Virus record (IMG/VR): IMGVR_UViG_3300034072_000926
Span: 372,001 to 436,000 of that record
Direction: 5' to 3' (one strand)
DNA length: 64,000 bases
Both the position numbers and the translations under genes were made by a program. The notes under the pieces are model-generated. The model saw nothing but the letters and a program-made list of their open reading frames with translations, ran no database searches and was not told the origin of the DNA. Shown here in pieces: positions 1 to 41,740 of the stretch (positions within the stretch are counted from its first letter, which is position 1; each line of letters opens with the position of its first letter).

Positions 1-375
1 GTCAGCCTTTGCCTGTGCGCTCTGTTGGCGACGCTCCTGCCAGGTCGGCTTGGGCTTTTGCTTTGCAGGAATAGGAACCAGATCCAACAAGCCGTCATCA
101 TCGCGACTGAACAGCTTGTATTCGCCGACACGACGATCCATCAGCATTTGATGGAGGGCTTCATGACGGAGAGCGATCATCTTCGACTCGTCGCTCATTT
201 CCTCGACCATCTCTCGAATGTTGACCGGGATCGAAATCGCCGACAACGTGATTGACATTGCGGGCTTGTAATAGTCAGTGAGGGCAAGGATCCGACCGAT
301 CCGATCGTTTATTTTCGGATCCTTGAGCATTGCTTCCACTTGGGCGTCCATGGCCTTGTTGAATTCCTCGCTCAT
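1..375 (-). CDS. hypothetical protein (runs off window start)
   Basis: ATG at 375 overlaps the upstream stop (TAATG); open frame MSEEFNKAMDAQ... to window edge. Confidence 0.7.
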   Translation of the reverse strand, partial: MSEEFNKAMDAQVEAMLKDPKINDRIGRILALTDYYKPAMSITLSAISIPVNIREMVEEMSDESKMIALRHEALHQMLMDRRVGEYKLFSRDDDGLLDLVPIPAKQKPKPTWQERRQQSAQAKAD

Positions 376-638
376 TAGCACGACTCCCTCTGTTCGAATT
401 GGATATAGTCCGCAGCATCGTAGAGGCCGAGGCGATTGAGCACCGCACGGGCATCAGCGAGCTGTTCATCCAGTGGGCGCTGCGTCTGTGCATATGCGGG
501 AATGGACTTCAGATCTTCGAAGATCGAGAACGCCTTGTTTTCCGTGCCGAAAAGCGCACGAGCGACCATTCGATCCTTCGCTTGTGCGATGGCTTCGTCC
601 TTGGATCCTGCTTCGTAGCTGCTGGGTGCGGTCTGCAT
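375..638 (-). CDS. hypothetical protein
   Basis: ORF directly after cassette SD GGAGATCGAAA. Confidence 0.8.
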   Translation of the reverse strand: MQTAPSSYEAGSKDEAIAQAKDRMVARALFGTENKAFSIFEDLKSIPAYAQTQRPLDEQLADARAVLNRLGLYDAADYIQFEQRESC

Positions 639-697
639 TTTCGATCTCCGTTTATTGCCTACTCACCTGTTTTAACAGATTACTGGGTAGGGTCAAC
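639..697 (-). promoter_or_regulatory. repeated early promoter/RBS unit
   Basis: GTTGAC...TGTTAAAACAGGTGAG...GGAGATCGAAA-ATG. Confidence 0.8.
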
Positions 698-901
698 CAG
701 AATTTCACATTCTTTTGGCAAAACAAGGAATGTCTCTCCCTGATATTCGCCCTCGGTGATCCTTATGTAGAAATACCGCGTATCGTATTCTTCGCCATCC
801 CAGAAGTAGCCATCGAATACTGCATTGGCTTCGACTGCACCGGTCCAAGGAGTAGAAAACGTGGCGCGCAGTTTGTCGCCCTTTTTGAGTTCATTCTGCA
901 T
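680..901 (-). CDS. hypothetical protein
   Basis: GAGGAGG SD before MQNELKKGDK; start re-called from ORF track. Confidence 0.7.
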   Translation of the reverse strand: MQNELKKGDKLRATFSTPWTGAVEANAVFDGYFWDGEEYDTRYFYIRITEGEYQGETFLVLPKECEILVDPTQ

Positions 902-911
902 CACTGCCTCC

Positions 912-1100
912 TCAATATTCGACATGGAGTTCGACACTCTGCAGACTTCCCTTGATGTCATAGATGACATCAGTGACAGTGAAATATCCCTCAGGGGTTC
1001 TGATGCGTTCGCCGACACGAGGAACATGACAGCTCTGATACTGCGCGATTTCCGTCCAGCAGCTATACCGTTCCCGGTAGACAGTGATTGTCAGTTCCAT
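912..1100 (-). CDS. hypothetical protein
   Basis: ATG after AGGAGATCGAAC; MELTITVYRE... Confidence 0.75.
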   Translation of the reverse strand: MELTITVYRERYSCWTEIAQYQSCHVPRVGERIRTPEGYFTVTDVIYDIKGSLQSVELHVEY

Positions 1101-1156
1101 GTTCGATCTCCTGTTTCTGTTGTCCACAGTTTAGCAGGATAGGTGAACAAGTCAAC
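1101..1156 (-). promoter_or_regulatory. repeated early promoter/RBS unit
   Basis: GTTGACTTGTTCACCTATCCTGCTAAACT...AACAGGAGATCGAAC. Confidence 0.85.
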
Positions 1157-1160
1157 CAAT

Positions 1161-1191
1161 AAAAAAGGGAAGTGTTTCCACTTCCCTTTTT
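1161..1191. terminator. intrinsic terminator (possibly bidirectional)
   Basis: AAAAAAGGGAAGTG-TTTC-CACTTCCCTTTTT perfect stem with A/T tails. Confidence 0.85.
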
Positions 1192-1368
1192 GATCTTTCA
1201 TCAGCTTCACGGCATTATCCCGTCTTCAGCACCCTTATCCGAGCCGTGTTAACTTCCTTGAGTATGCAATGATATCATAACAACGGAACACTCAAGGTTT
1301 GCAGCTGATGCTTCCTAGCCCATGATCTGCGGACTACAAAAGGAGCCGGGGGCACCGAATCTGTTTCT
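1161..1368 (-). ncRNA. candidate structured small RNA (~200 nt)
   Basis: own TTGACT-N16-TAAGTT promoter (to 1398) and terminator; no ORF; nested stems CATCAGCT/AGCTGATG, CCTTGAGT/ACTCAAGG, CACGGC/GCCGTG. Confidence 0.6.
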
Positions 1369-1402
1369 AGAACTTAACTCCTAACCATAAAGAGTCAAGC
1401 TA

Positions 1403-1846
1403 TTATTTTGCGGATTTCAACAATTCCTCAAGGGAGATACGCTCCACAAACCGTGCGCTAGGCATGTGGAAGAGAATCTGGGTTTCGCCCTTCTTCGTCT
1501 TCTTGCCGTTGACCTCGTAGATGCTCAGAGCCATCGAATCATTTGCACGATCGGCCAAGACCTTCAAGTCCTCGATGGACTGTCTTGGGAACCATTCAAA
1601 GACCTGGGCCATTGATTCAAAACCGAAATACCATTCCCGGCGATCCCGATGAACCCATTCGTATGTGGCCTTCTTGCCCTTACCCTTGCCTTCCCACCAG
1701 TCCTTGAGCAGCGGATCCAGTTCCGGACCAACGTGAACAGTAGGAGGAACATCTCCGCGCTCGATAGCCGCTTCGCTGATCTTGAACCCAAAGCCCCGGC
1801 TGTAAATGCCTTCGTCCTTGTTGTTCTCGAACCGGAAAATGAGCAT
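1403..1846 (-). CDS. hypothetical phage protein
   Basis: 147-aa ORF after cassette SD. Confidence 0.8.
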   Translation of the reverse strand: MLIFRFENNKDEGIYSRGFGFKISEAAIERGDVPPTVHVGPELDPLLKDWWEGKGKGKKATYEWVHRDRREWYFGFESMAQVFEWFPRQSIEDLKVLADRANDSMALSIYEVNGKKTKKGETQILFHMPSARFVERISLEELLKSAK

Positions 1847-1901
1847 TTCGATCTCCTCTTGCTTACCTGTTCATTTTAGCAGAATAGGTGAGCAAATCAA
1901 C
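1847..1901 (-). promoter_or_regulatory. repeated early promoter/RBS unit
   Basis: TTGATT..CTCACCTATTCTGCTAAAAT...AGGAGATCGAA. Confidence 0.8.
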
Positions 1902-2214
1902 CGATCTTTTTCAGTTTCAGAGCATTGATCTTGTCGGCCTCGATGCAGCCGACCCTGATCGAGAAGACGTCACTGTTCTCATATACCGCCAAGGTGAGCG
2001 AGGCATCACCGTTAACCCAAAGCTCAGTTTCTGAGGGTTGGAATACTTCCTTGAGAGAAAAGCCGAACGTGGCGAGGATATTTGCGCGATCCTCCCACTT
2101 TGCTTGATTTGACGAGTAGCAGATCTTGTCGCCGGTCATAGGAAGCGACCACGCATTCCGGCCTATGTTGCTGAGCCCGTCAAATGCTTTGCGAAGCTTG
2201 GTCATGTTGGACAT
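1897..2214 (-). CDS. hypothetical protein
   Basis: ORF after cassette SD. Confidence 0.75.
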   Translation of the reverse strand: MSNMTKLRKAFDGLSNIGRNAWSLPMTGDKICYSSNQAKWEDRANILATFGFSLKEVFQPSETELWVNGDASLTLAVYENSDVFSIRVGCIEADKINALKLKKIG

Positions 2215-2268
2215 ATCGATCTCCTCTGTTTACCAAATCGGTGTAGCAGATATGGTGATAACGTCAAC
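2215..2268 (-). promoter_or_regulatory. repeated early promoter/RBS unit
   Basis: TTGACG..TCACC..TGCTACAC...AGGAGATCGAT. Confidence 0.75.
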
Positions 2269-2508
2269 CTATTTTGCACCAAATGGTCGAGGGAAACCGA
2301 GAATCTGCTCGATAGCAATGTCGAGGTATTTGCTTGCTTCGCGCAAGCTCATGTTCATCTTTGACAGGTCAGTTTCCGACGGAAGATGAATCTCAGGAAG
2401 ACCTACCTTATACGCGAGAAGCCGCGCAGCATCTTCATCAAGACCTTGAAACGCCCCGGCATCCTTATGCAGCTGGATTATGGCATTGGCCGTCTCTTGA
2501 ATGTTCAT
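2269..2508 (-). CDS. hypothetical protein
   Basis: TAATG coupling with upstream ORF; MNIQETANA... Confidence 0.7.
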   Translation of the reverse strand: MNIQETANAIIQLHKDAGAFQGLDEDAARLLAYKVGLPEIHLPSETDLSKMNMSLREASKYLDIAIEQILGFPRPFGAK

Positions 2509-2669
2509 TACTTGGACACCTTGTTGCAATTGCCGAACGGAGCGCAGTAGGGTTCGCCGTCATCGCCGGTTGCGTAGACAATTCCTTCAACGACCTCATC
2601 GACGAAAGCGGCGACGATCACACCGGGCTGAATCTCCATCAATACTTCGTCACCGACATAGAGCTGCAT
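2508..2669 (-). CDS. small hypothetical protein (53 aa, below ORF-track cutoff)
   Basis: MQLYVGDEVLMEIQPG...KVSK* after cassette SD. Confidence 0.75.
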   Translation of the reverse strand: MQLYVGDEVLMEIQPGVIVAAFVDEVVEGIVYATGDDGEPYCAPFGNCNKVSK

Positions 2670-2728
2670 GTTCGATCTCCTTTTGCTGCCTACTCACCTG
2701 TTTTAGCACAAGTAAGTAGGCAGTCAAC
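2670..2728 (-). promoter_or_regulatory. repeated early promoter/RBS unit
   Basis: TTGACT...TGCTAAAACAGGTGAGTAGGCAGCAAAAGGAGATCGAAC. Confidence 0.85.
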
Positions 2729-2733
2729 CTCTT

Positions 2734-3546
2734 TTAGGCGTCCAGCTTCTTTGCTGCAATGCGCTGGGACAGCTTATTGTCGACCTTGACCATAACGTCC
2801 TTGTAGGGTGCCATGATCCGCACTTCCTTGCCCTCAAATGTGGTCACCGACACGCCACCCGAAGGGAAGTAGCGCGAGACTGTTCCGAACGCAATACCGG
2901 CGCCCGTCATGCACTGGCTGCTGTATTCCTTGTGCGTGAACATCACAGTATCGCCGACCTCGACCGTCTGACCGAGTTGGTCGACGAACTTCTTGACATT
3001 CGCCATCACTGCTTCGCGTTCGGCCGCTGCCTGACCCTTTGCCTTCTTCGTGAACTTCAGTTCGGTTGGACCATCATAGTCGAGCAGGACAGTAAGGGCA
3101 GCATATCCGCCCAGTTTCTTGCTAACATCGGTGCCATCGTCGAGGATGAACCGATATTCCGGATTCTGGTAGCTGCTGGCTTCCAATTGACCGCCAATGC
3201 ACTGGCAGTCAACAACCATTTTCTTGTACGAATCCCACATCTGGTAGTGATGAATTACAGGAGTGTCGCAGTCGACCTTCTTGTATTGATTAACAAAGCC
3301 GCCCTTCTGGTCATCTTCGTTTGTCATTTCGCTGAATTCGAGACGTTTGCGCTTGAATGCAGCGAGATTGAATCGGATGATCGAACCATTTCGCGCCCCT
3401 CCGTCGATCCGAATTGCGAAGGGCTTCTCACCAAGCTGGTAGGGCTCCAGCTTCTTGATCATCTCCATCTGTATTTCTTTCGAAGCAAGCAGATCAACCC
3501 AGCGCCCGTCGAAGAAAGTCCGCAGTTCAATTTCGGTGTAGGTCAT
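2734..3546 (-). CDS. hypothetical protein with C-terminal KOW/SH3-like barrel; paralog of 29756..30556
   Basis: FVDQLGQTVEVGDTV...FGTVSRY resembles FFDRLDQEVNIGDLV...VGVVKGY. Confidence 0.75.
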   Translation of the reverse strand: MTYTEIELRTFFDGRWVDLLASKEIQMEMIKKLEPYQLGEKPFAIRIDGGARNGSIIRFNLAAFKRKRLEFSEMTNEDDQKGGFVNQYKKVDCDTPVIHHYQMWDSYKKMVVDCQCIGGQLEASSYQNPEYRFILDDGTDVSKKLGGYAALTVLLDYDGPTELKFTKKAKGQAAAEREAVMANVKKFVDQLGQTVEVGDTVMFTHKEYSSQCMTGAGIAFGTVSRYFPSGGVSVTTFEGKEVRIMAPYKDVMVKVDNKLSQRIAAKKLDA

Positions 3547-3628
3547 GTTTCGATCTCCGTATTGTTTGCTTCTGTTGTCCTCAACTTAGCAGAAATAGGT
3601 GAAGCGTCAACCGCTTATTCACCTATTT
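3547..3628 (-). promoter_or_regulatory. repeated early promoter/RBS unit with dyad AATAGGTGAA/TTCACCTATT around -35
   Basis: boxes flank GTTGAC in inverted orientation. Confidence 0.85.
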
Positions 3629-4145
3629 TGTGAAAATCCTTGACCTCCCCTGCGCGACGTTCCGCTGCGGTCGTCCGTCGCCAGCCCAGTTCCTTCATCT
3701 TCGCAGTCTGTTCCTTGCCGCGCAAGTAGGCAAACTGGTTCCGCTCCTTGTCGAGTTCCCGCTGACGCTCTACGGCGTTCTTGTGCGCGAGGCTGTCTGC
3801 GTCGTGAGCCATATTCAGCGTGGCCGAGAAGCTGTTCTCATAGGCTACTGCGCCGTAGTGCCAGTTGGTCGAGAAGGTGTGGCCATCGGGGTGCATCAGC
3901 TTGTCGCCGTAGTTGACGTGACTGCCGTCCGGCGTAATGCGGTCATGTTTGTCGACGGGGCGGAAACCCAACGCGATAGCGCGGTCGTGCATACGATGCA
4001 GCATATTGGAACCGCCGTGCCCGCCGCGCTTATAGAATCTCGCAGAAGCCGGATAGACCATCTTGCCCTCATGGAAATGAGCTTCCTGGAAATCGACGTT
4101 CTGGCCGCTTCCGAGGATCTTCTTTGCGAGCTTCTGAAATTCCAT
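3615..4145 (-). CDS. hypothetical protein
   Basis: 176-aa ORF after cassette SD. Confidence 0.8.
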   Translation of the reverse strand: MEFQKLAKKILGSGQNVDFQEAHFHEGKMVYPASARFYKRGGHGGSNMLHRMHDRAIALGFRPVDKHDRITPDGSHVNYGDKLMHPDGHTFSTNWHYGAVAYENSFSATLNMAHDADSLAHKNAVERQRELDKERNQFAYLRGKEQTAKMKELGWRRTTAAERRAGEVKDFHKIGE

Positions 4146-4204
4146 GTTCGATCTCCGTTTGCTGTCTACTCACCTGTTTTAACACAAACAGGTGAGCAAT
4201 CAAC
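4146..4204 (-). promoter_or_regulatory. repeated early promoter/RBS unit
   Basis: TTGATTGCTCACCTGTTT..TGTTAAAACAGGTGAG inverted repeat across -10. Confidence 0.85.
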
Positions 4205-4206
4205 CA

Positions 4207-4533
4207 CTAAATGATCATTCGGGCAATTTCTTCCAGCTTCTGCCGGTCGCGGGTGAAGGAGATCATATCGTAGCCGCGCTTGGGATCGGTCACCGCGTAG
4301 CAGGCCTTGGCTTGCATCTGCGACTTGGGAATCGATCCGATTTCGATCCAAGCAAGCGTTTCCTGATGCTGGACCTGGACGACCGCGAAGGACTGCTCCT
4401 CGTAGGCGTTACGGCGGATGACCATTCGCAGCTTGCGACCCTTGTAGGAGAAGTGCTGCTTCATATACCAGGATTGCGACTGGTTGTAAAAGTTGGCCTG
4501 GTCGAGTGCCTTGAACGAGGAACGTGCTACCAT
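4207..4533 (-). CDS. hypothetical protein
   Basis: MVARSSFK... start after GGAGATCGAAA. Confidence 0.8.
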   Translation of the reverse strand: MVARSSFKALDQANFYNQSQSWYMKQHFSYKGRKLRMVIRRNAYEEQSFAVVQVQHQETLAWIEIGSIPKSQMQAKACYAVTDPKRGYDMISFTRDRQKLEEIARMII

Positions 4534-4593
4534 TTTCGATCTCCATGTTTGCTTTGTTGTCCTCAACTTAGCAGAATAGGTGAAAGTGTCAAC
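4534..4593 (-). promoter_or_regulatory. repeated early promoter/RBS unit
   Basis: TTGACACTTTCACCTATTCTGCTAAGTT. Confidence 0.85.
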
Positions 4594-4597
4594 CAGT

Positions 4598-4690
4598 TTA
4601 TACGATAAAAACAACAAATAGCACGATTGCGAAAACCGCGCTACTCATTACCAGACCAACGAGTCCGTTAGCATTTGTGCCCTTACTCAC
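4598..4690 (-). CDS. small membrane peptide (30 aa)
   Basis: GTG overlapping upstream gene end; hydrophobic AVFAIVLFVVFIV. Confidence 0.45.
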   Translation of the reverse strand: MSKGTNANGLVGLVMSSAVFAIVLFVVFIV

Positions 4691-5273
4691 CCTCTGCCTC
4701 CCGTAGCACCACAACACGGATATATTTACCCGTCGGATGCGCCCCCTGGGTGTAGGTGCCCTCAATGACGCGGAAACCCAGCTGTTCCATGTCGTGTTCG
4801 TCGAGGCGGGAAACATTCTTCCACCCTGCGCGGATCATTTCCGACTTGATATCGGCGAGACGGTTTGCGATGAATACCTTACCATTTCGGTCAGCATATC
4901 GCACCGGCCAATCCTCGAGCGCTTTTTTGACGCCGGCGATGAGCTTGAGGGTGCGCTCATTTTCGTCGACGATTTCGCGAGCTTTCCGACCCATATTTCG
5001 GAAGGCATTCGGATTCTCGCGGAAGAAATCTGCGACCGCCTGATTTTCGGCGATGATTTTCTCGGTTTCGCGCTGCTGGTGCTTGGCGAACAATTCATTT
5101 GCCAATTCTAAGTTAACGGGCGTTAACCCATTTGGGTAGACGGCCTTGAACCGCTGGAGGAGGAATTCAGGGTTAACATTGTAAAAAGGAGCAACTTCGG
5201 CTGCGACCTCCTCCGGAGTGCCTCCCTTGCGGAGTTCCTGGATAAAGTCGTCGAACGCTTCTGCCTTGCTCAT
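4683..5273 (-). CDS. hypothetical protein
   Basis: MSKAEAFDDF... after AGGAGATCGAAG. Confidence 0.8.
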   Translation of the reverse strand: MSKAEAFDDFIQELRKGGTPEEVAAEVAPFYNVNPEFLLQRFKAVYPNGLTPVNLELANELFAKHQQRETEKIIAENQAVADFFRENPNAFRNMGRKAREIVDENERTLKLIAGVKKALEDWPVRYADRNGKVFIANRLADIKSEMIRAGWKNVSRLDEHDMEQLGFRVIEGTYTQGAHPTGKYIRVVVLREAEGE

Positions 5274-5334
5274 CTTCGATCTCCTGCGCTGCATTTCGTG
5301 TCACCACTTTAGCAGAACAGGAGACTGAGTCAAC
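5274..5334 (-). promoter_or_regulatory. repeated early promoter/RBS unit (near-identical to 14263..14323)
   Basis: shared GCTGCATTTCGTGTCACCACTTTAGCAGAACAGGAGA. Confidence 0.85.
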
Positions 5335-5545
5335 CAGTTTTCTGGTAGTCTGTGGATTTTCCATCCAGGATCTTGATCGTATCCCTATCTTGTAGGCCAC
5401 GATTGGCCATGGCGCTGACCTCGTCGGCTAGCCGACGTTCTGATCCGGGACCGTCCGGGACAAAGCGGCAATCAATGTTGCCGCTTCCGTTATTGAGGAT
5501 GACCCAAGTTCCATTGTCCTTGTCCATTAGTAGAACAATTCCCAA
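5330..5545 (-). CDS. hypothetical protein
   Basis: ORF coupled to upstream gene. Confidence 0.6.
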   Translation of the reverse strand: MGIVLLMDKDNGTWVILNNGSGNIDCRFVPDGPGSERRLADEVSAMANRGLQDRDTIKILDGKSTDYQKTG

Positions 5546-5922
5546 TCGCTAGCCAGTTCGGCATAGAAGGCCGCCTCAAAGCGCGCCATGTTGTTGGACA
5601 TGAAGGACGTCGACTGATTGGTGAACCGAGCCTTGTCGATTGCGGTCTTGACGATGAAGTTGTAGAGCCGGGTAACAGCTTCTTCCTCAGTCTCGGGCAG
5701 TTCTTCGCCGGCATGGCTGGCGCGCTTGTCTTCCCATCCCTGGATGCTTGCGAGGTAATAGCCGGCGACCTGCTTCTGTGCGGCCGCCTTCATGGCATCT
5801 TCGCCCCAGATGAAAGCGTGGACGGGATTCTGAGCCAGCTCTTCCTTGAACTTGTCGAGTTCACGATCGGCCTGTGCAACGATGCTCTCGAACTTCTTTT
5901 TGATCTGCTGCATGGTGGGCAT
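5527..5922 (-). CDS. hypothetical protein
   Basis: MPTMQQIKKKF... after cassette SD. Confidence 0.8.
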   Translation of the reverse strand: MPTMQQIKKKFESIVAQADRELDKFKEELAQNPVHAFIWGEDAMKAAAQKQVAGYYLASIQGWEDKRASHAGEELPETEEEAVTRLYNFIVKTAIDKARFTNQSTSFMSNNMARFEAAFYAELASDWELFY

Positions 5923-5982
5923 ATTCGATCTCCTGTTTGCTTCTGTTGTTCTCAACATAGCAGAACAGGAGATCATGTCAAC
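5923..5982 (-). promoter_or_regulatory. repeated early promoter/RBS unit; spacer is exact complement of SD
   Basis: TTGACATGATCTCCTGTTCTGCTATGTT...AACAGGAGATCGAAT. Confidence 0.85.
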
Positions 5983-5989
5983 CAGTTTC

Positions 5990-6496
5990 TTACTTGGTTG
6001 CCTTAGCAGCCCAAGATTGCGACATGCCGTAGATATCACCCAATGCGCGCTGCGACATCTTGCCACCGGAGGCTTTGACGATATCGGCAATCTGCTTCAC
6101 AGCATCGATGGGCTTGATCCGACCACATGCCGGCTTCGACGTCTTCAGTGTTGCAAGCGCGTCAATGTCGGCCTGCGTGATAACATTCGAGCGAAGAAGC
6201 TGCTCGAGAATGTTGGACGAAATGACCTTGACCTTTGCTGAAGTCTTAGCAGGCTTCATAGCCTGCTTCATCTTATGATGATCGCCTTTGGCTCGGATAG
6301 TAACACCGGCCAGAGCAAGATTATCACGTACCTGCTTCGGAGAAACCTTGTAAGTCTCTGCGAGATCTCGCAGAGACTCGCCACTCTGATATCGACGCTG
6401 CGCTTCTCCATCGAAAATGGCCTTACCGAGAAGACCGGGAATGGTGAGGTTCTTGAAAGCTGCGATAGTCATAAAATCACAAGTCCTTTGTTGCAC
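5990..6496 (-). CDS. helix-turn-helix DNA-binding protein
   Basis: YQSGESLRDLAETYKVSPKQVRDNL HTH; second HTH-like MSQRALGDIYGMSQSW. Confidence 0.65.
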   Translation of the reverse strand: MQQRTCDFMTIAAFKNLTIPGLLGKAIFDGEAQRRYQSGESLRDLAETYKVSPKQVRDNLALAGVTIRAKGDHHKMKQAMKPAKTSAKVKVISSNILEQLLRSNVITQADIDALATLKTSKPACGRIKPIDAVKQIADIVKASGGKMSQRALGDIYGMSQSWAAKATK

Positions 6497-6612
6497 TAAA
6501 GCATTTTGCTTTTAGTGTTTGTTTGTTTGTGCATTGCTGCGTTTGTTTAACTGCCCTTTAAGAGCACGTTACCTATTCTATATACGGGAATAGGTAACGC
6601 CGCGTCAACCTA

Positions 6613-7104
6613 TTAAAAAGGTTCGACACAGAAATTTGGCACGAAAAGAACAAGGCTCGGAAGGTCTGCAAATCCGAGTGGTTTGCCCTTGAAGCGAACA
6701 GGAATACAGTTCTCAGGAATTTGCGATTTGCTGTAGCTGTCAAGCCGAGCATAGGTTCCATGTTGGCCGACTTTGAGGGGCTCTTCCCCGACCCTGACAT
6801 TACGCTTGATACGAAGCTTTGTCCCGACCTTGAATGCCTTTGGATGCTGCTCAGAGAGCAGCGCACGGGTGGCCTCCCACGTGTTCAAAGTCTTCAGGGC
6901 GTCCTGCATTGCCGCAAGCTCGTCCTCAAACTCTTTGATCTCCTCAGGGGAGAAAGGACCAGGGTGTTCGCTATTGCAGAGCAATATCAGCTCACATGTC
7001 TTGATCGACGATGTGAACGATTCGCGATAACGCTCATAGTCGCGAAGGGAGGTCGCAATGCCTCCCTCCATGAAATTCTCGATGACCGTTTTGTAGAGTC
7101 TCAT
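6613..7104 (-). CDS. hypothetical protein
   Basis: ATGA overlap with upstream ORF. Confidence 0.75.
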   Translation of the reverse strand: MRLYKTVIENFMEGGIATSLRDYERYRESFTSSIKTCELILLCNSEHPGPFSPEEIKEFEDELAAMQDALKTLNTWEATRALLSEQHPKAFKVGTKLRIKRNVRVGEEPLKVGQHGTYARLDSYSKSQIPENCIPVRFKGKPLGFADLPSLVLFVPNFCVEPF

Positions 7105-7307
7105 CGAAATGCAGCCCGTCCCAGCTTATAGAGAATGAACAGACCGACCAGCGTAGGAAGGATGATCATGCCCGCCGATGTCAGGACATAGAGGGTTGCG
7201 CCGACCACCCAGAGGATGAACAGAAGGATTTTCACAGCCATTGCACCCACTGCTAGGATGCAGCAAATGATGATCAGGAACAGTAGACAACCCAACATTT
7301 CATTCAT
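7101..7307 (-). CDS. small membrane protein
   Basis: highly hydrophobic 68 aa; GGAGG SD. Confidence 0.7.
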   Translation of the reverse strand: MNEMLGCLLFLIIICCILAVGAMAVKILLFILWVVGATLYVLTSAGMIILPTLVGLFILYKLGRAAFR

Positions 7308-7465
7308 TCTTCGATCCTCCAGATCACGACCTTGTCGAACATTGCCGACTTTGCGGAGATCACACTGGCCCGCTTGATGGGGTCAGTGGCCTCTTCCGTA
7401 GTTATCTCGAACGGGTGTTCCTTACGGTGACGCCCGTTCTTGGTCGTGATGATCAGCTTTGCCAT
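7304..7465 (-). CDS. small hypothetical protein (53 aa)
   Basis: MAKLIITTKNGRH...IEE*, coupled to neighbours at both ends. Confidence 0.65.
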   Translation of the reverse strand: MAKLIITTKNGRHRKEHPFEITTEEATDPIKRASVISAKSAMFDKVVIWRIEE

Positions 7466-7794
7466 TAGGCGCTGACCGAGCCGGCGAGCAGCGAAGCGTT
7501 GGTTGCTTCGGTGAAGCGCGCCAGGGTGAACCAGCCATACTTGCCGGGGATCAGCGCAACCTTGGCGCCCGGTTCCGGCAGATGGTCAGCGATTGCGCTG
7601 GGCAGGCCGATCCGACGACCCGAACCCTTGACGCTCAGGTTCTTGAGCAGCTGGTCGTCCGAGAGGTTGGCATCGCTGGTGCGTTCGGTGAACCGGATCA
7701 TGACGCGACCTTCCTTGACGGTCACGCGAGCCTTGGTGTTCTGGCCGATCTTTTCCGACGTCGTAGCTGAATTGAAATTCACAGTCTTATACAT
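7465..7794 (-). CDS. 'KYGWF' paralog family protein 1
   Basis: RVTVKEGRVMIRFTER...GKYGWF shared with 48260 and 51082 ORFs; AAGGAGA SD. Confidence 0.8.
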   Translation of the reverse strand: MYKTVNFNSATTSEKIGQNTKARVTVKEGRVMIRFTERTSDANLSDDQLLKNLSVKGSGRRIGLPSAIADHLPEPGAKVALIPGKYGWFTLARFTEATNASLLAGSVSA

Positions 7795-7939
7795 GAGTAT
7801 CTCCTTGTTCTCTTCGGAGCACCATTGCCCCGCTTCATACTCTGAAACTAGCACCAGGTTTAGAACTGTCAACCAGGTTTTTCATATTAGGAAGTAAATC
7901 TATTAGAAAATGACCAGTATCGAGATAGGTTTGTTACTC

Positions 7940-7984
7940 AAAAGAAAAGATGGTTTGCGGTCATCGCAAACCATCTTTTCTTTG
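7940..7984. terminator. bidirectional intrinsic terminator
   Basis: AAAAGAAAAGATGGTTTGCG-GTCAT-CGCAAACCATCTTTTCTTTT. Confidence 0.85.
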
Positions 7985-7995
7985 AAATGGAATGT

Positions 7996-8331
7996 TTAGG
8001 CAACGAGTCCGTAGGTCTCGCGCTCTTCACGTTCATCTGCGGTCATCATCTTCCCCAGCGCGTGGAGGTAGCCGAAGCGAGCAGCCTGACGCCATGCGCC
8101 GTTCTCGTCGCCCTTCATTGCGAACAGCTTGACCGCATCGCTGTTGGTCAGATCATTGTCTTCGCTGTCGAGACCGTTGCCGTTGAAAACTGCGAAGAAA
8201 TCGCTCTCGATGGGCTGGCATACGGTGACCAGAACTTCGTCGCCGCAATAGATTTGGATGAGATGTTCGCAATCGAAAGTTGCAGTCGTCAGCGCATAGT
8301 TGCGACGTGCGATCTCGTTTTCGATGGACAT
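7996..8331 (-). CDS. hypothetical protein
   Basis: AACAGGAG SD and TTGAC promoter at 8332-8393. Confidence 0.75.
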   Translation of the reverse strand: MSIENEIARRNYALTTATFDCEHLIQIYCGDEVLVTVCQPIESDFFAVFNGNGLDSEDNDLTNSDAVKLFAMKGDENGAWRQAARFGYLHALGKMMTADEREERETYGLVA

Positions 8332-8400
8332 TTGGAAACTCCTGTTTGTGTCTTTGTATCACCTAAATAGAGTAGATCTAGGTGAGGGTCAACATCTTTT

Positions 8401-8634
8401 TCAGAACTTTTTCAGGATTTTATCCATCTCTGCGATCTTTGCCTTGAGGTCATCAAGGAGGGCTTGATTGCGACGGTCCACTTCTTCCCGCTCCTTCCCG
8501 AATACCGGCATCTGCACGATGATAGCGAGCTCGGACTTAGTGACCATTTTGACGAACTCGTTCCGCAACGAGAGCGCCATCTTCTGGTTCAGCTTGTCGC
8601 GGTTATCCCACCACTGTTTGACGGGGACTGTCAT
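8401..8634 (-). CDS. hypothetical protein
   Basis: ATGA overlap. Confidence 0.7.
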   Translation of the reverse strand: MTVPVKQWWDNRDKLNQKMALSLRNEFVKMVTKSELAIIVQMPVFGKEREEVDRRNQALLDDLKAKIAEMDKILKKF

Positions 8635-8999
8635 CCCCTCACCGCCGCTGCATCGGCTTTTGCGGGATTGGCCTTTGCTTCTTCGGCCCAGCCAACATAG
8701 GCTTCGTAGACACGCACCACTAGCGCATCACATGCCTGCGTGAGGGTAAGCTGACGGGACTCGAAGCCGAGAACTTCCTGGACGAACATGCCGACCACTT
8801 CGTCCTTCATTGCCAACCAGGCATCAGAGGTGCGCGTCGTGTTCGGCGAAATCGTCTTTGCCAGTTCGTGTGCCGGCGTCGAGACCTGCTGAACCAGCAG
8901 AATTGCGAGACTGCCGAGACCACGGAATTCAGTTCCGCCGCGAACCAGCTGACGAACCGCATAGTCCTTGGCCCAAAGCCTTGCTTCGTTGATATCCAT
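8631..8999 (-). CDS. hypothetical protein
   Basis: after cassette SD. Confidence 0.8.
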   Translation of the reverse strand: MDINEARLWAKDYAVRQLVRGGTEFRGLGSLAILLVQQVSTPAHELAKTISPNTTRTSDAWLAMKDEVVGMFVQEVLGFESRQLTLTQACDALVVRVYEAYVGWAEEAKANPAKADAAAVRG

Positions 9000-9056
9000 G
9001 TTCGATCTCCTTATTGCCTATGTGCCTATTTTAGCACATAGGTGGATAGAGTCAAC
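9000..9056 (-). promoter_or_regulatory. repeated early promoter/RBS unit
   Basis: TTGACTCTATCCACCTATGTGCTAAAAT...AAGGAGATCGAAC. Confidence 0.85.
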
Positions 9057-10964
9057 CTAATATTTCCGGCCCCGCATACGAGAGTATTCCATCTTCCGCT
9101 GCTCTTGTTCAGCTTGTTCGCGATCCGCCATATATTTGCGGAGAACCGCCTTCGAGTCGGCCTTGACCTTCTCGGCCTTCATAGCTTCTGCACGTGCCTT
9201 TTCATCCGCTATGGCTTTTTTCCGAATCTTGTTGTTTAGATTAAGCAAAAACAGCTGGGCTTCGGTTTGAGTTTCGAACCGGTGCATTTCATCTTCGGTT
9301 CGGACTATGAATTGTCCGAGATTATTTTCTTTGTTGTAGCCGGACTTTGGACCCGCAATCTTCAACTGATTACAGATATCCTGGATAAGATCCTCGAATG
9401 ACTCGTAATCACAGAGGCCATAGACTTTGACCTTCCATTCATTGTTAATGAGCATGATCAACTCAATCTCATCCTGTCCACCAATGACTTGGTAAATGTC
9501 TTCATTGAGACTAAAATCGCTATAAACGATTTCCTGACAGAAGTGATTGACTTGGTCAAAGACATCCTGCCATGTTTCTCCTCTCAGACAAAGGATATTT
9601 GATTGAGCAGTCGGCTCATAGGCATCCTCGAGGTATCGTTCCTTCATCTTATTCATTTTGCGCTCATAGCGATCCTCGGCGAGAAACATATCTCGCAAGG
9701 ATTCTATGTCGTCATTCTCTTGTTCCTTATTCTCAAGAGGAACAATCTCAGCCTTCTTTGTTGGTGGTGCAAGCAAACTCTGTGCCACAACATCATCGGC
9801 CTGTAACTGGCGTAGATGACGCATTGAAGCGGGCATATAGTTCTCAGGCTTCGTCCACCATTCGGGCGCTGGCAATGCCTCGGCCAACGGTCCGTTAGGA
9901 TTGAGGAAGAATGCTTTGCCTTCGCTCATCCAGTAATGGTCGTTCATTTCCCGCTGCTGTTCAACAGTCCAGAAATTGTTCGAGACAGCCGGAGGACCCT
10001 CGGCTTCCAACTGACGAGCAACGCGCTGTTCGCTTGTCTGAATGAGGACCAGGTTCTTCTCGATAGCTTCCTGATTTGCTGCATAGTCGTTCAACTGGGC
10101 TTCGAGGCGCTGTTGCCTGATGGCTTCCCGATTGGCAATGATCCACCAAATTTTGCTCGCCGTGATCATGAGGCCGTCTCGACCCAAGTTGATATCCTGA
10201 TGGTGCTGGAAGACGGCGGGGAGACTTGCTTTCACTTCGTTTGCTGTCGGATAGAAGTTCCTCAGTTCATAGAACAGTTTCAAACCCTTTTCAGTCAACC
10301 ACCAACGTGGCGAACCCTTCTCCCAAGTGTGGCCATTCGATATAAGCCCTTGCTTGGTCAGGTTATCAATTATGGACTTGTGATATCCGCTTATGCCAAT
10401 TGAGTGAATCCTGTTCGGATTCAAGCATAGGTTGGGTTGCTTTGACTCTTGGATTCCTCGAACTGCACCCTCAATTTCATTGAGCTCGGCGACATTTATG
10501 GAATACTTCTCTGCCAGTTTGTCCTTGAAATCATAGACCTGACGATTAAACTCGGAAATGGTCAGACGTGCCGACTTACCAGTGCTTGCTGTGTAGCAGG
10601 TATGAAGATGGGCTTGGAGGTGCTGTCCCTTGTCAGTCAGGAAATAATATCCGAACTGTTCAAAGACGATATTCTTCCTCATGAGGGTTTTGATACCCTC
10701 ATGATGTTGATCTGGCCAAAGTGGATCAGGACGGTGCGCAAGCCTCATACCTGAGAATTGCTTGTGAGATGCGCCGGAACCGTCAGGATCGATAAGTGTG
10801 ATCTCTTCGGCCTGACGGATCATCATGCAGCTATACTGAGTGATACCTCGACCTTCAAGCGTCGCAACTGCCTTCGGGTATTTCATTCCTCGGATAAGAT
10901 CATGAAGTTCCATTGAGCTTTCCCGAAGGTCCCTTTCTAAGGCTTGTGCGGCTCCAAATATCAT
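9057..10964 (-). CDS. large hypothetical protein, possible winged-helix repeats
   Basis: 635 aa; two 'LT.KG' wing motifs (YFLTDKG, WWLTEKG); upstream TAAATA. Confidence 0.7.
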   Translation of the reverse strand: MIFGAAQALERDLRESSMELHDLIRGMKYPKAVATLEGRGITQYSCMMIRQAEEITLIDPDGSGASHKQFSGMRLAHRPDPLWPDQHHEGIKTLMRKNIVFEQFGYYFLTDKGQHLQAHLHTCYTASTGKSARLTISEFNRQVYDFKDKLAEKYSINVAELNEIEGAVRGIQESKQPNLCLNPNRIHSIGISGYHKSIIDNLTKQGLISNGHTWEKGSPRWWLTEKGLKLFYELRNFYPTANEVKASLPAVFQHHQDINLGRDGLMITASKIWWIIANREAIRQQRLEAQLNDYAANQEAIEKNLVLIQTSEQRVARQLEAEGPPAVSNNFWTVEQQREMNDHYWMSEGKAFFLNPNGPLAEALPAPEWWTKPENYMPASMRHLRQLQADDVVAQSLLAPPTKKAEIVPLENKEQENDDIESLRDMFLAEDRYERKMNKMKERYLEDAYEPTAQSNILCLRGETWQDVFDQVNHFCQEIVYSDFSLNEDIYQVIGGQDEIELIMLINNEWKVKVYGLCDYESFEDLIQDICNQLKIAGPKSGYNKENNLGQFIVRTEDEMHRFETQTEAQLFLLNLNNKIRKKAIADEKARAEAMKAEKVKADSKAVLRKYMADREQAEQEQRKMEYSRMRGRKY

Positions 10965-39684: not shown

Positions 39685-40053
39685 TTATTGCTTCAAATCA
39701 ACAGGAGTTATTTCCTTTGGAGCATCCGGACGAGTCTCGCCGATGCTCTTCAGCTTTTCGTCCTGTTCTTTCTGTAGTTCTGCCTCTCGTTGCGCAGCAT
39801 TCATGTCCATCAGGTCATTGCATTCGCCCCTCGTGAACACGCCATCGGCTTTAGATTTCAGAATGAAGATCCTGAAATTGGGATGGGTTTCATAGAAGGA
39901 CTCGAACAGACTGTAGCAGGAATCTGAGGCACGTTCGTTGTCACGATGGTGGTTCATGTAATAGGGAAAGCCTACCCCAAAACCCACTATCACTGCACAA
40001 CATGAAGCGAACAGTAAAGCTGATGATCGATTAGACAATCTCTTCCTCCTCAA
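39685..40053 (-). CDS. membrane-anchored hypothetical protein
   Basis: N-terminal TM. Confidence 0.65.
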   Translation of the reverse strand: MRRKRLSNRSSALLFASCCAVIVGFGVGFPYYMNHHRDNERASDSCYSLFESFYETHPNFRIFILKSKADGVFTRGECNDLMDMNAAQREAELQKEQDEKLKSIGETRPDAPKEITPVDLKQ

Positions 40054-41668
40054 TCAACACGCCTGCTCGAATCCTCAAAATGTTGATGCAGTTCTCAAGA
40101 CCATACGCCTCAATGAATGCACCGAACCGAGGACCATCACTGGATCCCAACAGGCACTCGTATAGCGCCTGGAACCAAGAACGCAAAGGTTCAAATCCAT
40201 GTGCCTTGCCAACCTCATATACCTGATACTGGTAATGATCAGCCGTCATGTTGGGCAGCATTGCCTCAAGGCGAGTAGCAAGGTCGATGAACGCATCAGC
40301 TTCCTGAACCGTTGGTTCCCGACATTCACGATCATACAGACCACGCTCAGTCGCGTAGCGGATGACCTTGTTGGCCTTGATGAGAACCTGCAACCGCTGC
40401 TGGAAGTCAAGTGGTCGAGACTGTTCGAGGTAGCTGACCAGCGTTTCAGCGTCCGAAGCCTGGCTGACCACGCTCAAGTTGAGCAATAGGCTATACGCCA
40501 CATCGACGATCGGTTCGGCGATCCCATTCTCAGTGAAGAACCACGCAGCATCGTTCGGAGTGAGCGGTCGCCCAAGCATCTTCAGATAGTCGTCTTCCAT
40601 CTTGGGAACAAGATCGATATGAATCGGCTTAGATGCAGTCGGCTTCTGGAACAGGAAGAGCATGAGCGATTCCTTAGAGCCATAGGACAACCAGTCCTCA
40701 ATCGAAAAGCCATTGCCCTTCGACTTGCTGATCTTCTTGCCCTCTGCGTCGAGGAAGAGTTCATAGGTCATGCCAACTGGAGGTGTCCCGCCGATTGCAC
40801 GACAGATCTTCCGAGAAGCCGTAACCGAATCAATGAGATCCTTGCCGGACATTTCGTAGTCCACATCAAAGTGAGCCCAGCGCATTGCCCAGTCCACCTT
40901 CCACTGAAGCTTGGAGCGACCATTACCCGTTGGGCTCGTCACCGCCGTGACATCATCCCTTCCGGTTTCCCACGTGAGCTGGCGCCCGGGGATCACCATT
41001 TCGCGCGAGACACCCTCATTGAGGAGTCGTCCCTCAAAAAGCGGCATGAATGGACTGTAGGTTGCGCGGCGCTCCTCACCCAGTGTGGGCAGCATCACGC
41101 CCTGAATGGCATCGTAATTGTCCCAGATGCGATCCAGCATTTCGTTGAACTTGCCCGACCGGTAATAGTCAGAGGAGCTCACGAAGGATACGCGACTCCG
41201 ATCCGGCGAGCTGCCGACCACCGAGCCATCGTAGGTCTTGAGAATGTCGTCAACAAACCGCACCAGACGATCGTTGTTAGCGCCCGCAAAGCTGCCTGCA
41301 TACTGGTCGGCATCGTTGGCCACGCACTCGTCCATTTCCGGATAAGGATTTGGAACCGTGCTCAGCGGCTTGCCCAGATAATCCTGCATCCACGCGGGCA
41401 TCCCATCAGGAACCTTCCGCATCGCGTCGTAGTCGTCGCTGAACATGATAAGTCGAGTCTGATACGCCTTGTCAGTCAGCGTATCAAATGCCTTCATAAC
41501 CCAAAGGGTGCGAACAACTTCTGCGAACGTGCCGATATGCGGCGCACCCGAGGGACCATAGCCGGTCTCGAACGTCACGACATCACCAGGCTTCTTCCCC
41601 TTCTTCTCAATATGCTTGAGAAGTGAACGGGCCTCTTGGAAGGGCCAGCTCTTTGCCTGAGTAGTCAC
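40031..41668 (-). CDS. lysS: lysine--tRNA ligase, class I
   Basis: SWPFQEA, FETGYGPSGAPHIGTFAEV, KLQWKVDW, EMSGKDL, KISKSKGNG, GPRFG; AAGGAGG SD before GTG. Confidence 0.92.
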   Translation of the reverse strand: MTTQAKSWPFQEARSLLKHIEKKGKKPGDVVTFETGYGPSGAPHIGTFAEVVRTLWVMKAFDTLTDKAYQTRLIMFSDDYDAMRKVPDGMPAWMQDYLGKPLSTVPNPYPEMDECVANDADQYAGSFAGANNDRLVRFVDDILKTYDGSVVGSSPDRSRVSFVSSSDYYRSGKFNEMLDRIWDNYDAIQGVMLPTLGEERRATYSPFMPLFEGRLLNEGVSREMVIPGRQLTWETGRDDVTAVTSPTGNGRSKLQWKVDWAMRWAHFDVDYEMSGKDLIDSVTASRKICRAIGGTPPVGMTYELFLDAEGKKISKSKGNGFSIEDWLSYGSKESLMLFLFQKPTASKPIHIDLVPKMEDDYLKMLGRPLTPNDAAWFFTENGIAEPIVDVAYSLLLNLSVVSQASDAETLVSYLEQSRPLDFQQRLQVLIKANKVIRYATERGLYDRECREPTVQEADAFIDLATRLEAMLPNMTADHYQYQVYEVGKAHGFEPLRSWFQALYECLLGSSDGPRFGAFIEAYGLENCINILRIRAGVLIEEEEIV

Positions 41669-41740
41669 GTATGCCTCCTTGAATACTATCAAGCTGCAAC
41701 GTATAGACAATCACACAGGTGTCAACCTATTTAGGAGGAC

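What the first reader, a model, noticed from the sequence alone, without database searches (positions are those of the whole stretch)
1161..1398. Stand-alone ~200-nt structured sRNA with an exposed anti-SD-like seed
Seen on minus: TTGACT-N16-TAAGTT promoter, ORF-free body, then a strong terminator. Body stems are TAGTCC/GGGCTA (the G-U pair supports this strand) and a three-way junction closed by CATCAGCT/AGCTGATG containing CCTTGAGT/ACTCAAGG and CACGGC/GCCGTG. The 5' part has GGCTCCTTTT, complementary to AAAAGGAG. Inference: a phage ncRNA, possibly base-pairing with SD sequences like alphaproteobacterial anti-SD sRNAs, or a protein decoy. I cannot assign a known family.
Basis: partly seen in the sequence, partly recalled or inferred. 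Interest (0 to 1): 0.7.

Follow-up and report, generated by a model that had tools for sequence, protein, structure and literature searches.

The report
New pseudoknotted small RNA in huge phages
This is a real, independently transcribed, roughly 200-nucleotide non-coding RNA gene whose fold is conserved in a small clade of 280-465 kb phages and matches no known RNA family, but the "anti-Shine-Dalgarno seed" proposed for it is not conserved.

Summary
On the minus strand, 1398-1153 holds a promoter (TTGACT-16-TAAGTT), an ORF-free body of about 170 nt and a 13-bp intrinsic terminator.

I found seven distinct homologues. Four are in IMG/VR huge-phage genomes of 277-465 kb, one copy each; three are in Logan contigs. 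All lie directly 3' of a PF26820 (T4 Y00F-like) gene.

93% of cells are paired, against 31-44% in slid controls. Nineteen pairs change on both sides. None of 500 shuffles reaches the observed values. G-U pairs and folding energy fix the minus strand as the RNA strand.

Promoter geometry and the terminator are conserved while their sequences drift.

No Rfam 15 family matches. Pattern scans of JGI metagenome contigs and GTDB genomes added nothing, and a 500-kb relative lacks the RNA.

GGCUCCUUUU is neither conserved nor exposed. The invariant parts are GGUGCCCCC at the 5' end and GGGUGCU in the P3 terminal loop. These two are mutually complementary (-10.5 kcal/mol). A second long-range pairing, P0 loop with 3' tail, covaries.

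My reading is a compact, probably doubly pseudoknotted RNA that acts through its shape (protein or ligand binding, possibly catalysis). It is an accessory element of the early, host-takeover region. Expression and function remain untested.

The parts
1371..1398 (-). Promoter: -35 TTGACT (1398-1393), 16-nt spacer, -10 TAAGTT (1376-1371)
   Evidence: In all 7 homologues TTGACn, a 16-nt spacer and a TAnnnN hexamer lie 14 nt (15 in L259) before GGUGCCCCC, while the spacer sequence diverges. Transcription from it has not been shown.
1357..1364 (-). Inferred 5' end and short leader (AACAGAUUC); +1 about A1364
   Evidence: The 7th base after the -10 is A in 6 of 7 homologues, and an AACAG-like motif is conserved. 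This is inference only.
1348..1356 (-). Invariant GGUGCCCCC: either the loop of a weak 5' hairpin (H1) or the 5' strand of pseudoknot PK1
   Evidence: Invariant in 7 of 7. H1 folds at only -0.4 to -4.7 kcal/mol. The duplex GGUGCCC:GGGUGCU is -10.5 kcal/mol. Three unconstrained folds pair these two segments.
1311..1342 (-). P0 hairpin (TAGTCCG/TGGGCTA, loop CAGATCA 1329-1323) with a possible basal extension CTTTT (1342-1338)/GGAAG (1315-1311)
   Evidence: P0 is 100% paired in 7 sequences. The closing pair covaries (AU, UA, CG, GU). U-G and G-U pairs are invariant. The extension allows 4-5 pairs in every homologue but shows only one-sided changes.
1199..1310 (-). Three-way junction: P1 (1310-1303/1206-1199), P2 (1297-1288/1265-1256), P3 (1248-1240/1222-1208)
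   Evidence: P1 has 4 of 8 pairs with double changes and is 100% paired. P2 has 8 of 8 pairs with double changes. P3 is 100% paired with 3 covarying pairs.
1223..1238 (-). Invariant terminal loop of P3, AUAAGGGUGCUGAAGA; GGGUGCU (1234-1228) is the proposed 3' strand of PK1
   Evidence: GGGUGCU and AAGAC are invariant in 7 of 7. Complementary to GGUGCCC over 7 pairs, 3 of them G-U. There is no variation, so covariation cannot test it.
1192..1198 (-). 3' tail AAAGAUC; GAUC is the proposed partner of P0 loop GAUC (PK2)
   Evidence: Loop column 37 with tail column 173 reads A-U in 3 sequences and G-C in 4. Column 36 with 174 reads G-C in 3, U-A in 3 and C.A in 1. In the six sequences, 23 of 24 cells pair, against 8-13 of 24 when slid; L259 adds four more paired cells. 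The two states follow two clades, so this is about one evolutionary event.
1153..1191 (-). Intrinsic terminator (13-bp stem, GAAA loop, U-run), overlapped by the -35 of the next gene's promoter (TTGACT 1155-1150)
   Evidence: Terminator scan. A hairpin of -21 to -30 kcal/mol followed by a U-rich run is present in all homologues, with different stem sequences.
1403..1846 (-). Upstream neighbour: 147-aa PF26820 (Phage_T4_Y00F) family protein. It has no terminator of its own, so the RNA may also be its 3' UTR
   Evidence: It is the upstream neighbour in all 7 loci. Seven family members looked up at other loci have no RNA behind them.

Best explanation
Window 1398-1153 (minus strand) is a self-contained gene for a non-coding RNA of about 200 nt. 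It belongs to a previously undescribed family confined to a narrow clade of huge phages.

Transcription. It is probably transcribed by the host sigma-70-type polymerase from its own promoter. It probably also forms the 3' end of the upstream Y00F-like mRNA. It ends at a strong intrinsic terminator.

Fold. There is a 5' segment with invariant GGUGCCCCC, then a hairpin P0, then a three-way junction P1/P2/P3 whose P3 terminal loop carries invariant GGGUGCU. I infer that two long-range pairings lock the 5' and 3' halves into one compact body:
- PK1: GGUGCCC with GGGUGCU.
- PK2: the P0 loop with the 3' tail.

Mechanism. I think it works through this shape and its invariant unpaired or tertiary nucleotides. 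The likeliest action is binding and sequestering or guiding a protein (host or phage). Less likely, it binds a small ligand or catalyses a reaction. It does not work through a linear antisense seed.

Setting. Its own promoter and terminator, its position among small early genes and its patchy presence among relatives mark it as an accessory, host-takeover or counter-defence type element.

What is shown and what is inferred. Shown: the gene anatomy, the conserved secondary structure, the strand, the non-coding nature and the distribution. Inferred: transcription, both pseudoknots and the mode of action.
For: - Seven distinct homologues score 136-175 bits with model R1, against 25 bits or less for every other hit.
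- There is one copy per genome in four phage records of 277-465 kb.
- Covariation on alignment A10: 93.0% of cells are paired against 31-44% in slid controls. Nineteen pairs have changes on both sides, against 2-7 in the controls. None of 500 shuffles reaches any measure.
- The P2 stem sequence differs widely among the sequences while pairing is kept; all 8 of its pairs show changes on both sides.
- Invariant G-U pairs, and folds 9-15 kcal/mol better than the complement, fix the strand.
- Promoter geometry (TTGAC-16-TAnnnN, then 14/15 nt) and terminator hairpins are kept while their sequences diverge.
- There is no conserved reading frame. The GUG frame runs 5 to 35 codons (counting the in-frame UUG start in two homologues), there is no SD, and indels shift the frame.
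- 75 invariant columns cluster in loops and junctions.
- The PK1 duplex is -10.5 kcal/mol, against a weak local hairpin.
- PK2 covaries at two positions.
- RNA identity stays at 72-82% in every pair, while the flanking gene ranges from 63 to 86%.
Against: - No expression evidence. Wastewater metatranscriptome contigs cover the upstream gene and only the first 10-25 nt and the last 70 nt of the RNA, at depth 4-20. They may be DNA carry-over.
- The -10 hexamer is weak: 3 of 6 in the window and TAAACC in L007.
- PK1 cannot be tested, because both strands are invariant.
- PK2 rests on roughly one evolutionary event between two clades. With only AAA as linker it is hard to reconcile sterically with a fully stacked P0 extension plus P0.
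- The CM-derived alignment leans towards the modelled structure.
- With seven sequences, part of them mosaic, the number of independent events is small.
- Nothing identifies a binding partner.
Confidence: 0.6

Rival explanations
1. It is a base-pairing regulatory sRNA. Either it uses the reader's anti-SD seed (GGCUCCUUUU), or a conserved loop (the C-rich UGCCCCC, or the GAUC of the P0 loop) pairs with the shared GGAGAUCGAA leaders of the roughly 60 early genes and shuts them off together.
For: - The clade has a strikingly uniform SD plus spacer. GGAGATC-N3-8-ATG occurs 43-66 times per genome, against 0-3 for the reversed control.
- In clade A the P0 loop GAUC(U)U could pair with (G)AGAUC.
- C-rich loops are classic seeds in Gram-positive sRNAs (my own knowledge).
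Against: - GGCUCCUUUU is not conserved and is partly paired.
- Clade B RNAs have GUC instead of GAUC in the loop. Yet the one clade-B genome I could test, G002, still uses GGAGAUC leaders (47 sites), so the loop does not covary with the target.
- The complement of the invariant 9-mer occurs nowhere else in the genome, and 7-mer complements are not enriched.
- The possible contacts are only 4-6 bp.
Confidence: 0.1
2. It is a ligand-sensing aptamer or a ribozyme. On this reading the double-pseudoknot core binds a metabolite or signalling nucleotide (acting as an RNA sponge or sensor) or catalyses a reaction.
For: - About 75 invariant positions are concentrated in loops and junctions, while helices drift freely.
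- Two candidate pseudoknots interlock the domains.
- That pattern is typical of aptamers and ribozymes (established knowledge of riboswitch and ribozyme families).
Against: - No Rfam riboswitch or ribozyme model matches, even at E up to 10.
- There is no expression platform. I found no conserved anti-terminator, the downstream gene has its own promoter, and in L003 the next gene is convergent.
- No adjacent gene hints at a ligand.
Confidence: 0.2
3. It is a cis-acting 3' UTR of the Y00F-like gene. On this reading a structured end plus terminator stabilises or insulates that mRNA and has no separate function.
For: - There is no terminator between the gene's stop codon (1403) and the RNA.
- The RNA follows this gene in all seven loci.
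- Metatranscriptome contigs run from the gene into the first nucleotides of the RNA.
Against: - A positionally conserved promoter lies between the stop codon and the RNA.
- Seven family members looked up at other loci manage without the element.
- Invariant loops and a 170-nt multi-helix fold are far more than a stabilising hairpin needs.
- L003 combines a window-like gene and promoter with an RNA 3' half like that of L128, so the RNA evolves as its own unit.
Confidence: 0.08
4. It encodes a micro-peptide starting at the invariant GUG (Met-Pro-Pro...).
For: GUG CCC CCN is invariant. In the window the frame is open for 26 codons.
Against: - The frame length varies: 5 codons in L097 and L128, 16-35 in others, counting the in-frame UUG start in L003 and L061.
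- The sequences after Pro-Pro are unrelated, and indels break the frame.
- There is no SD, although this phage uses a very strong one.
- Substitutions are compensatory in helices, not third-position.
Confidence: 0.02

Closest known systems
Stand-alone, moron-like phage and prophage small RNA genes (for example lambda OOP, DicF of prophage Qin, IsrK) - named from my own knowledge, not tested here
   Same: A short, ORF-free transcription unit with its own sigma-70-type promoter and intrinsic terminator, inserted between protein genes of a phage. Accessory distribution.
   Different: Those RNAs act by antisense pairing through defined single-stranded regions. Here no conserved linear seed exists and the conserved nucleotides sit in a multi-helix, probably pseudoknotted fold. 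There is no sequence or model similarity.
Orphan complex-folded ncRNAs found by comparative genomics, some phage-associated (GOLLD, ROOL, HEARO, raiA; all in Rfam)
   Same: Many covarying helices, invariant junctions and loops, no known function, occurrence in phage or mobile DNA.
   Different: This RNA is much smaller (about 170-nt core against 200-800 nt). No Rfam model matches. It is known from only seven sequences in one phage clade.
   Same: A pyrimidine-rich or C-rich stretch near the 5' end (UGCCCCC loop).
   Different: The proposed seed is neither conserved nor unpaired. The invariant C-run is not complementary to the clade's GGAGAUC SD.
Double-pseudoknot ribozymes and aptamers (HDV-like, twister, glmS, and riboswitches such as SAM-II and preQ1-II)
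   Same: Candidate interlocking long-range pairings and invariant core nucleotides with freely drifting helices.
   Different: No model match. The order of helices differs. There is no cleavage-site context and no regulated downstream gene. Both pseudoknots are still only inferred.
Bacterial RNase P RNA
   Same: Short resemblances: AGUCCG...GGGCU recalls CR-I, and AGGGUGC recalls the P7/P8 region. The genome carries 58 tRNA genes.
   Different: AGUCC pairs locally as a hairpin, not as the long-range P4. Most conserved regions are missing. RNase P models give no hit at E up to 10. I treat the resemblance as coincidence.

Membership tests
Any Rfam 15 family | Covariance-model score at or above the family's gathering threshold | tested here: not met
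   No match at gathering threshold in the 64-kb window or in five homologous loci. At E up to 10 on 1050-1500, only terminator-driven hits of 11-21 bits appear, against thresholds of 39-80.
Anti-SD base-pairing sRNA | Conserved, single-stranded motif complementary to the SD of target mRNAs | tested here: not met
   GGCUCCUUUU varies in all homologues and can pair with GGAAG/GGAGG. No conserved complement to GGAGAUCGAA exists.
Stand-alone sRNA gene (own promoter, ORF-free, intrinsic terminator) | Sigma-70-type promoter directly upstream | tested here: met
   TTGACn-16-TAnnnN is conserved in position in 7 of 7 homologues while the spacer drifts. The -10 is weak and promoter activity has not been measured.
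Stand-alone sRNA gene (own promoter, ORF-free, intrinsic terminator) | Intrinsic terminator at the 3' end | tested here: met
   A 13-bp GC-containing stem plus U-run. Hairpins of -21 to -30 kcal/mol with compensatory changes occur in all homologues.
Stand-alone sRNA gene (own promoter, ORF-free, intrinsic terminator) | No conserved coding frame | tested here: met
   Frames of 5-35 codons with unrelated sequences and no SD.
Stand-alone sRNA gene (own promoter, ORF-free, intrinsic terminator) | Discrete transcript of the predicted size | tested here: inconclusive
   Only scattered low-depth Logan contigs in wastewater metatranscriptomes. None spans the RNA body.
Riboswitch (cis-regulatory aptamer plus expression platform) | Sits in the 5' UTR of the regulated gene, with mutually exclusive terminator and anti-terminator pairing | tested here: not met
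   The next gene has its own promoter overlapping the U-run. In L003 the next gene is convergent. By inspection of A10 and the terminator sequences, no conserved segment competes with the terminator stem.
RNase P RNA | Conserved regions CR-I to CR-V with the long-range P4 helix | tested here: not met
   No RNase P model hit at E up to 10. AGUCC pairs locally with GGGCU.
Type III toxin-antitoxin RNA (ToxI-like) | Tandem direct repeats preceding a toxin gene | tested here: not met
   BLAST of the RNA against its own genome shows no internal repeat apart from the terminator's inverted arms. The RNA follows its neighbour gene rather than preceding it.

The most novel reading that the evidence does not exclude
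A phage-encoded, doubly pseudoknotted RNA that acts as a high-affinity trap or decoy. It would bind either a host protein (for instance a defence sensor or an RNA-binding regulator) or a signalling nucleotide. It would be made early in infection by huge phages as an RNA-only counter-defence or take-over factor. Alternatively it is a new small ribozyme class.
Probability: 0.25. Interest if true: 0.85.

Novelty: new variant of a known kind. Interest (0 to 1): 0.6.

Why it matters
Huge phages are known almost only from metagenomes, and their non-coding repertoire beyond tRNAs and CRISPR arrays is hardly charted. This is a compact RNA with unusually clear covariation from only seven sequences. It has invariant loops and two candidate pseudoknots, and it sits as an independent cassette among early genes.

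If it binds a host factor or a small molecule, it would add an RNA-based tool to the phage take-over or anti-defence kit. If it is catalytic, it would be a new ribozyme class.

At about 170 nt, with defined mutations available to test PK1 and PK2, it is directly tractable in vitro even though the phage is uncultured.

Tried and rejected
- Rfam, at gathering threshold and at permissive E-values: nothing.
- tRNA or tmRNA in the window: none.
- Paralogues in the genome: none.
- GenBank phage collection, blastn of window 1-6000: no match.
- Chance matches discarded:
  - L115 and L116, which are GC-rich coding DNA.
  - L099, which lies inside a 1544-aa ORF.
  - All other IMG/VR pattern hits checked with the model.
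  - 120 GC-rich bacterial hits, none with the second motif and at most 24.5 bits in the 100 that were scored with the model.
- JGI metagenome contig scan: only known members.
- A 500-kb relative, G004: no match.
- RNase P resemblance: rejected.
- Trans-pairing of the invariant motifs to phage targets: no enrichment.
- P0-loop pairing to early-gene leaders: the loop changes but the leaders do not.
- Riboswitch-type anti-terminator: none seen by inspection.
- Expression from public RNA runs: uninformative.
- Function of the upstream protein by fold search. Foldseek against PDB gave no hit at E <= 0.001. VIA-align gave Z of 4.4 or less, with ADP-ribosyltransferase-fold toxins over-represented among the weak hits. 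This is a hint only.
- I did not run complex prediction, because I make no claim of a specific protein partner.

Full report
**Setting.** The window is bases 372001-436000 of a 465,259-bp IMG/VR virus record rated 100% complete. GC content is 49%. The genome has 58 tRNA genes, and the window encodes a class I lysyl-tRNA synthetase. Near-identical DNA occurs in subsurface, soil, indoor and wastewater samples. The finding lies in a long minus-strand run of small genes. Most of these have their own copy of a stereotyped promoter and leader, TTGACn...TGCTAAAGT...ACAACAG..AGGAGATCGAAC-ATG.

**Observation.** Read on the minus strand, the stop codon of a 147-aa gene (1403) is followed by these elements:
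- -35 TTGACT (1398-1393), 16 nt, -10 TAAGTT (1376-1371).
- 14 nt, then GGTGCCCCC (1356-1348).
- A 13-bp terminator (1191-1162) with a T-run.
- Directly after it, the next gene's promoter.

The body has no credible ORF. So the description is accurate. On its own this would be only suggestive.

**Homologues.** The upstream protein belongs to Pfam PF26820 (Phage_T4_Y00F). Fetching contigs that encode its relatives, and scanning collections with conserved RNA motifs, gave seven distinct versions of the intergenic element:

| Version | Source |
|---|---|
| window | G000, 465 kb |
| L003 (L004-L006 identical) | Logan contigs |
| L007 = L014 | G001, 462 kb, terminal repeats |
| L061 = L117 = L118 | G002, 417 kb |
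| L097 | G003, 277 kb |
| L128 | Logan contig |
| L259 | Logan contig |

- A covariance model built from five of them scores all seven at 136-175 bits. Everything else scores at most 25 bits.
- Each complete phage record has exactly one copy.
- Nothing turned up in JGI metagenome contigs beyond these phages.
- GTDB representative genomes gave no true match in two pattern scans.
- The GenBank phage collection gave no match to window 1-6000.
- A 500-kb relative whose AAA protein is 49% identical has no match.
- Seven Y00F-family genes looked up at other loci are followed directly by the next gene, with no RNA.

**Structure.** The alignments show textbook compensation:
- P1: CAUCAGCU/AGCUGAUG becomes CCUUAGCU/AGCUAGGG, CGCCAGCU/AGCUGGUG, CUCCAGCU/AGCUGGAG, UCUUAGCU/AGCUAGGA and UAUCAGCU/AGCUGGUA.
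- P2 differs widely among the sequences (for example CCUUGAGUGU, UGGGAUGGU, CUAAGGUGU, GACGAU, AAGUGAG), yet each still pairs with its own partner.
- P3 changes CACGGC/GCCGUG to CGUGGU/ACCACG and CGCGG/CCGCG.
- The closing pair of P0 runs through U-A, C-G, A-U and G-U.

On the seven-sequence alignment:
- 93.0% of cells are standard pairs, against 31-44% when the 3' partners are slid by 1-3 columns.
- 19 pairs show changes on both sides, against 2-7 in the slid controls.
- None of 500 column shuffles reaches any of the five measures.

The caveats are that this alignment was fitted by the model and that the sequences are related. However, the MAFFT alignments made before any model show the same compensation.

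Invariant U-G and G-U pairs, and folds 9-15 kcal/mol more stable than the reverse complement, show that the minus strand is the RNA. This also argues against a DNA-level element.

**Gene anatomy.** In all seven, TTGACn, a 16-nt spacer and a TAnnnN hexamer lie 14 nt (15 in L259) before GGUGCCCCC, while the spacer sequences differ. The 7th base after the hexamer is A in six of seven. All seven end in a strong hairpin with unrelated stem sequence and a U-rich run. This is how a functional promoter and terminator evolve. Transcription itself is not shown. The public wastewater metatranscriptomes hold only low-depth contigs over the neighbouring gene and the edges of the RNA.

**What is conserved.** Seventy-five columns are invariant:
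- GGUGCCCCC at the 5' end.
- AGUCCG and UGGGCU of P0.
- The inner four pairs of P1 (AGCU/AGCU).
- A GU.G motif (CGUYG-like) inside P2.
- UAAC in the P2-P3 junction.
- GGGUGCU.AAGAC in the 17-nt terminal loop of P3.
- GAAGCU....AAAGA at the 3' side.

It varies in every homologue, and its pyrimidines can pair with the purine run after P0.

**Candidate tertiary pairings.**
- PK1. GGUGCCC and GGGUGCU are complementary over 7 pairs and give -10.5 kcal/mol. The local 5' hairpin gives only -0.4 to -4.7. Three unconstrained folds choose this long-range pairing. Both strands are invariant, so covariation is silent on it.
- PK2. The P0 loop and the tail after P1 can pair. Loop GAUC pairs with tail GAUC in the window, L007 and L097. 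Loop GUC pairs with tail GAC in L003, L061, L128 and L259. One column pair switches A-U to G-C and the next switches G-C to U-A, with one C.A exception. In the six sequences, 23 of 24 cells pair, against 8-13 of 24 when slid, and L259 adds four more paired cells.
- Limits on PK2. The two states follow two clades, so this is about one evolutionary event. A three-nucleotide linker is hard to fit with a fully stacked P0 extension. I call it suggestive.

**Evolution.**
- RNA identity is 72-82% in every pair, while the flanking gene ranges from 63 to 86%.
- L003's flanking protein is 93% identical to the window's, and it shares the window's promoter and leader. Its tail and terminator, however, are nearly those of L128. 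The RNA gene is therefore mosaic and behaves as its own unit.

**Mechanism.** These options are excluded or unlikely:
- An anti-SD or other linear seed. Complements of the invariant motifs are absent or not enriched in the genome. The clade's uniform leader GGAGAUCGAA occurs at 43-66 sites per genome, against 0-3 for the control. It stays the same in G002, the one clade-B genome I could test, although clade-B P0 loops have lost GAUC.
- A riboswitch. There is no regulated downstream gene and no competing anti-terminator.
- A peptide.
- Any Rfam family, including RNase P, despite short resemblances.

What remains is an RNA whose helices drift freely while its loops and junctions are frozen, probably tied into a compact body by two long-range pairings. 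That pattern fits an RNA recognised by its shape. My estimates, conditional on the gene being real (which I put at about 0.9):
- Protein-binding decoy or scaffold: about 0.4.
- Ligand-binding RNA or ribozyme: about 0.2.
- Pairing sRNA: about 0.1.
- mRNA 3'-end element: about 0.1.

It has its own promoter and terminator, lies among early genes, and is patchily present among relatives. These features are those of accessory take-over or counter-defence cassettes. That last step is inference.

**The neighbour.** The Y00F-like protein models with pLDDT 96 but has no significant solved relative. The weak hits (Z of 4.4 or less) are dominated by ADP-ribosyltransferase-fold toxins such as MbcT, ParT, RES, DarT and pertussis-like A subunits. 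Invariant residues include R5, E7 and Q123. This is a lead, not a finding. Because most family members lack the RNA, I do not claim a functional pair.

**Verdict.** This is a genuine new family of structured phage RNA. Function is unknown but experimentally approachable.

Noticed in passing
window-wide minus strand, e.g. 1155-1098, 2730-2690, 4210-4146; genome 352-447 kb: Dozens of small genes each carry a near-identical promoter plus leader, TTGACn-(t)CACCTATTCTGCTAAAGTGG..ACAACAG..AGGAGATCGAAC-ATG. GGAGATC-N3-8-ATG occurs 66, 66, 47 and 43 times in the four related phages, against 0-3 for the reversed control. The fixed GATCGAA spacer after the SD suggests recognition by a dedicated factor.
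   Followed up: partly
genome (outside the window) 1-10,300; 222209-222282; 441571-441647: ARAGORN finds 58 tRNA genes, 43 of them packed in the first 10 kb. Two have anticodon CUA (called 'Pyl'), which makes them possible amber suppressors.
   Followed up: no
window 1403-1846 (-): The PF26820 (T4 Y00F-like) protein gives a confident AF2 model (pLDDT 96). It has no significant PDB match, but its weak structural hits are enriched for ADP-ribosyltransferase, RES and DarT-fold toxins. R5, E7 and Q123 are invariant in 36 homologues.
   Followed up: partly
L003:860-1110 compared with window 1150-1400 and L128:530-800: The RNA gene is mosaic. L003 has the window's promoter and leader but L128's tail and terminator, although its flanking gene is 93% identical to the window's. 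This points to recombination inside the RNA gene.
   Followed up: partly
window 40031-41710 (-): A class I lysyl-tRNA synthetase (PF01921, E = 6e-88) is encoded by the phage.
   Followed up: no
window 1162-1191: The terminator hairpin has an A-run before it and a T-run after it. It is called on both strands, so it is potentially bidirectional. The -35 of the next gene's promoter (TTGACT 1155-1150) overlaps its U-tail, and the same arrangement recurs in five homologues.
   Followed up: no
window 1356-1364 compared with 1128-1098: The RNA's 5' leader (AGAAACAGAUUCG-GUG) resembles the standard early leader (AGAAACAGGAGAUCGAAC-AUG) with the SD missing. The cassette may descend from an early protein-gene cassette.
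   Followed up: no
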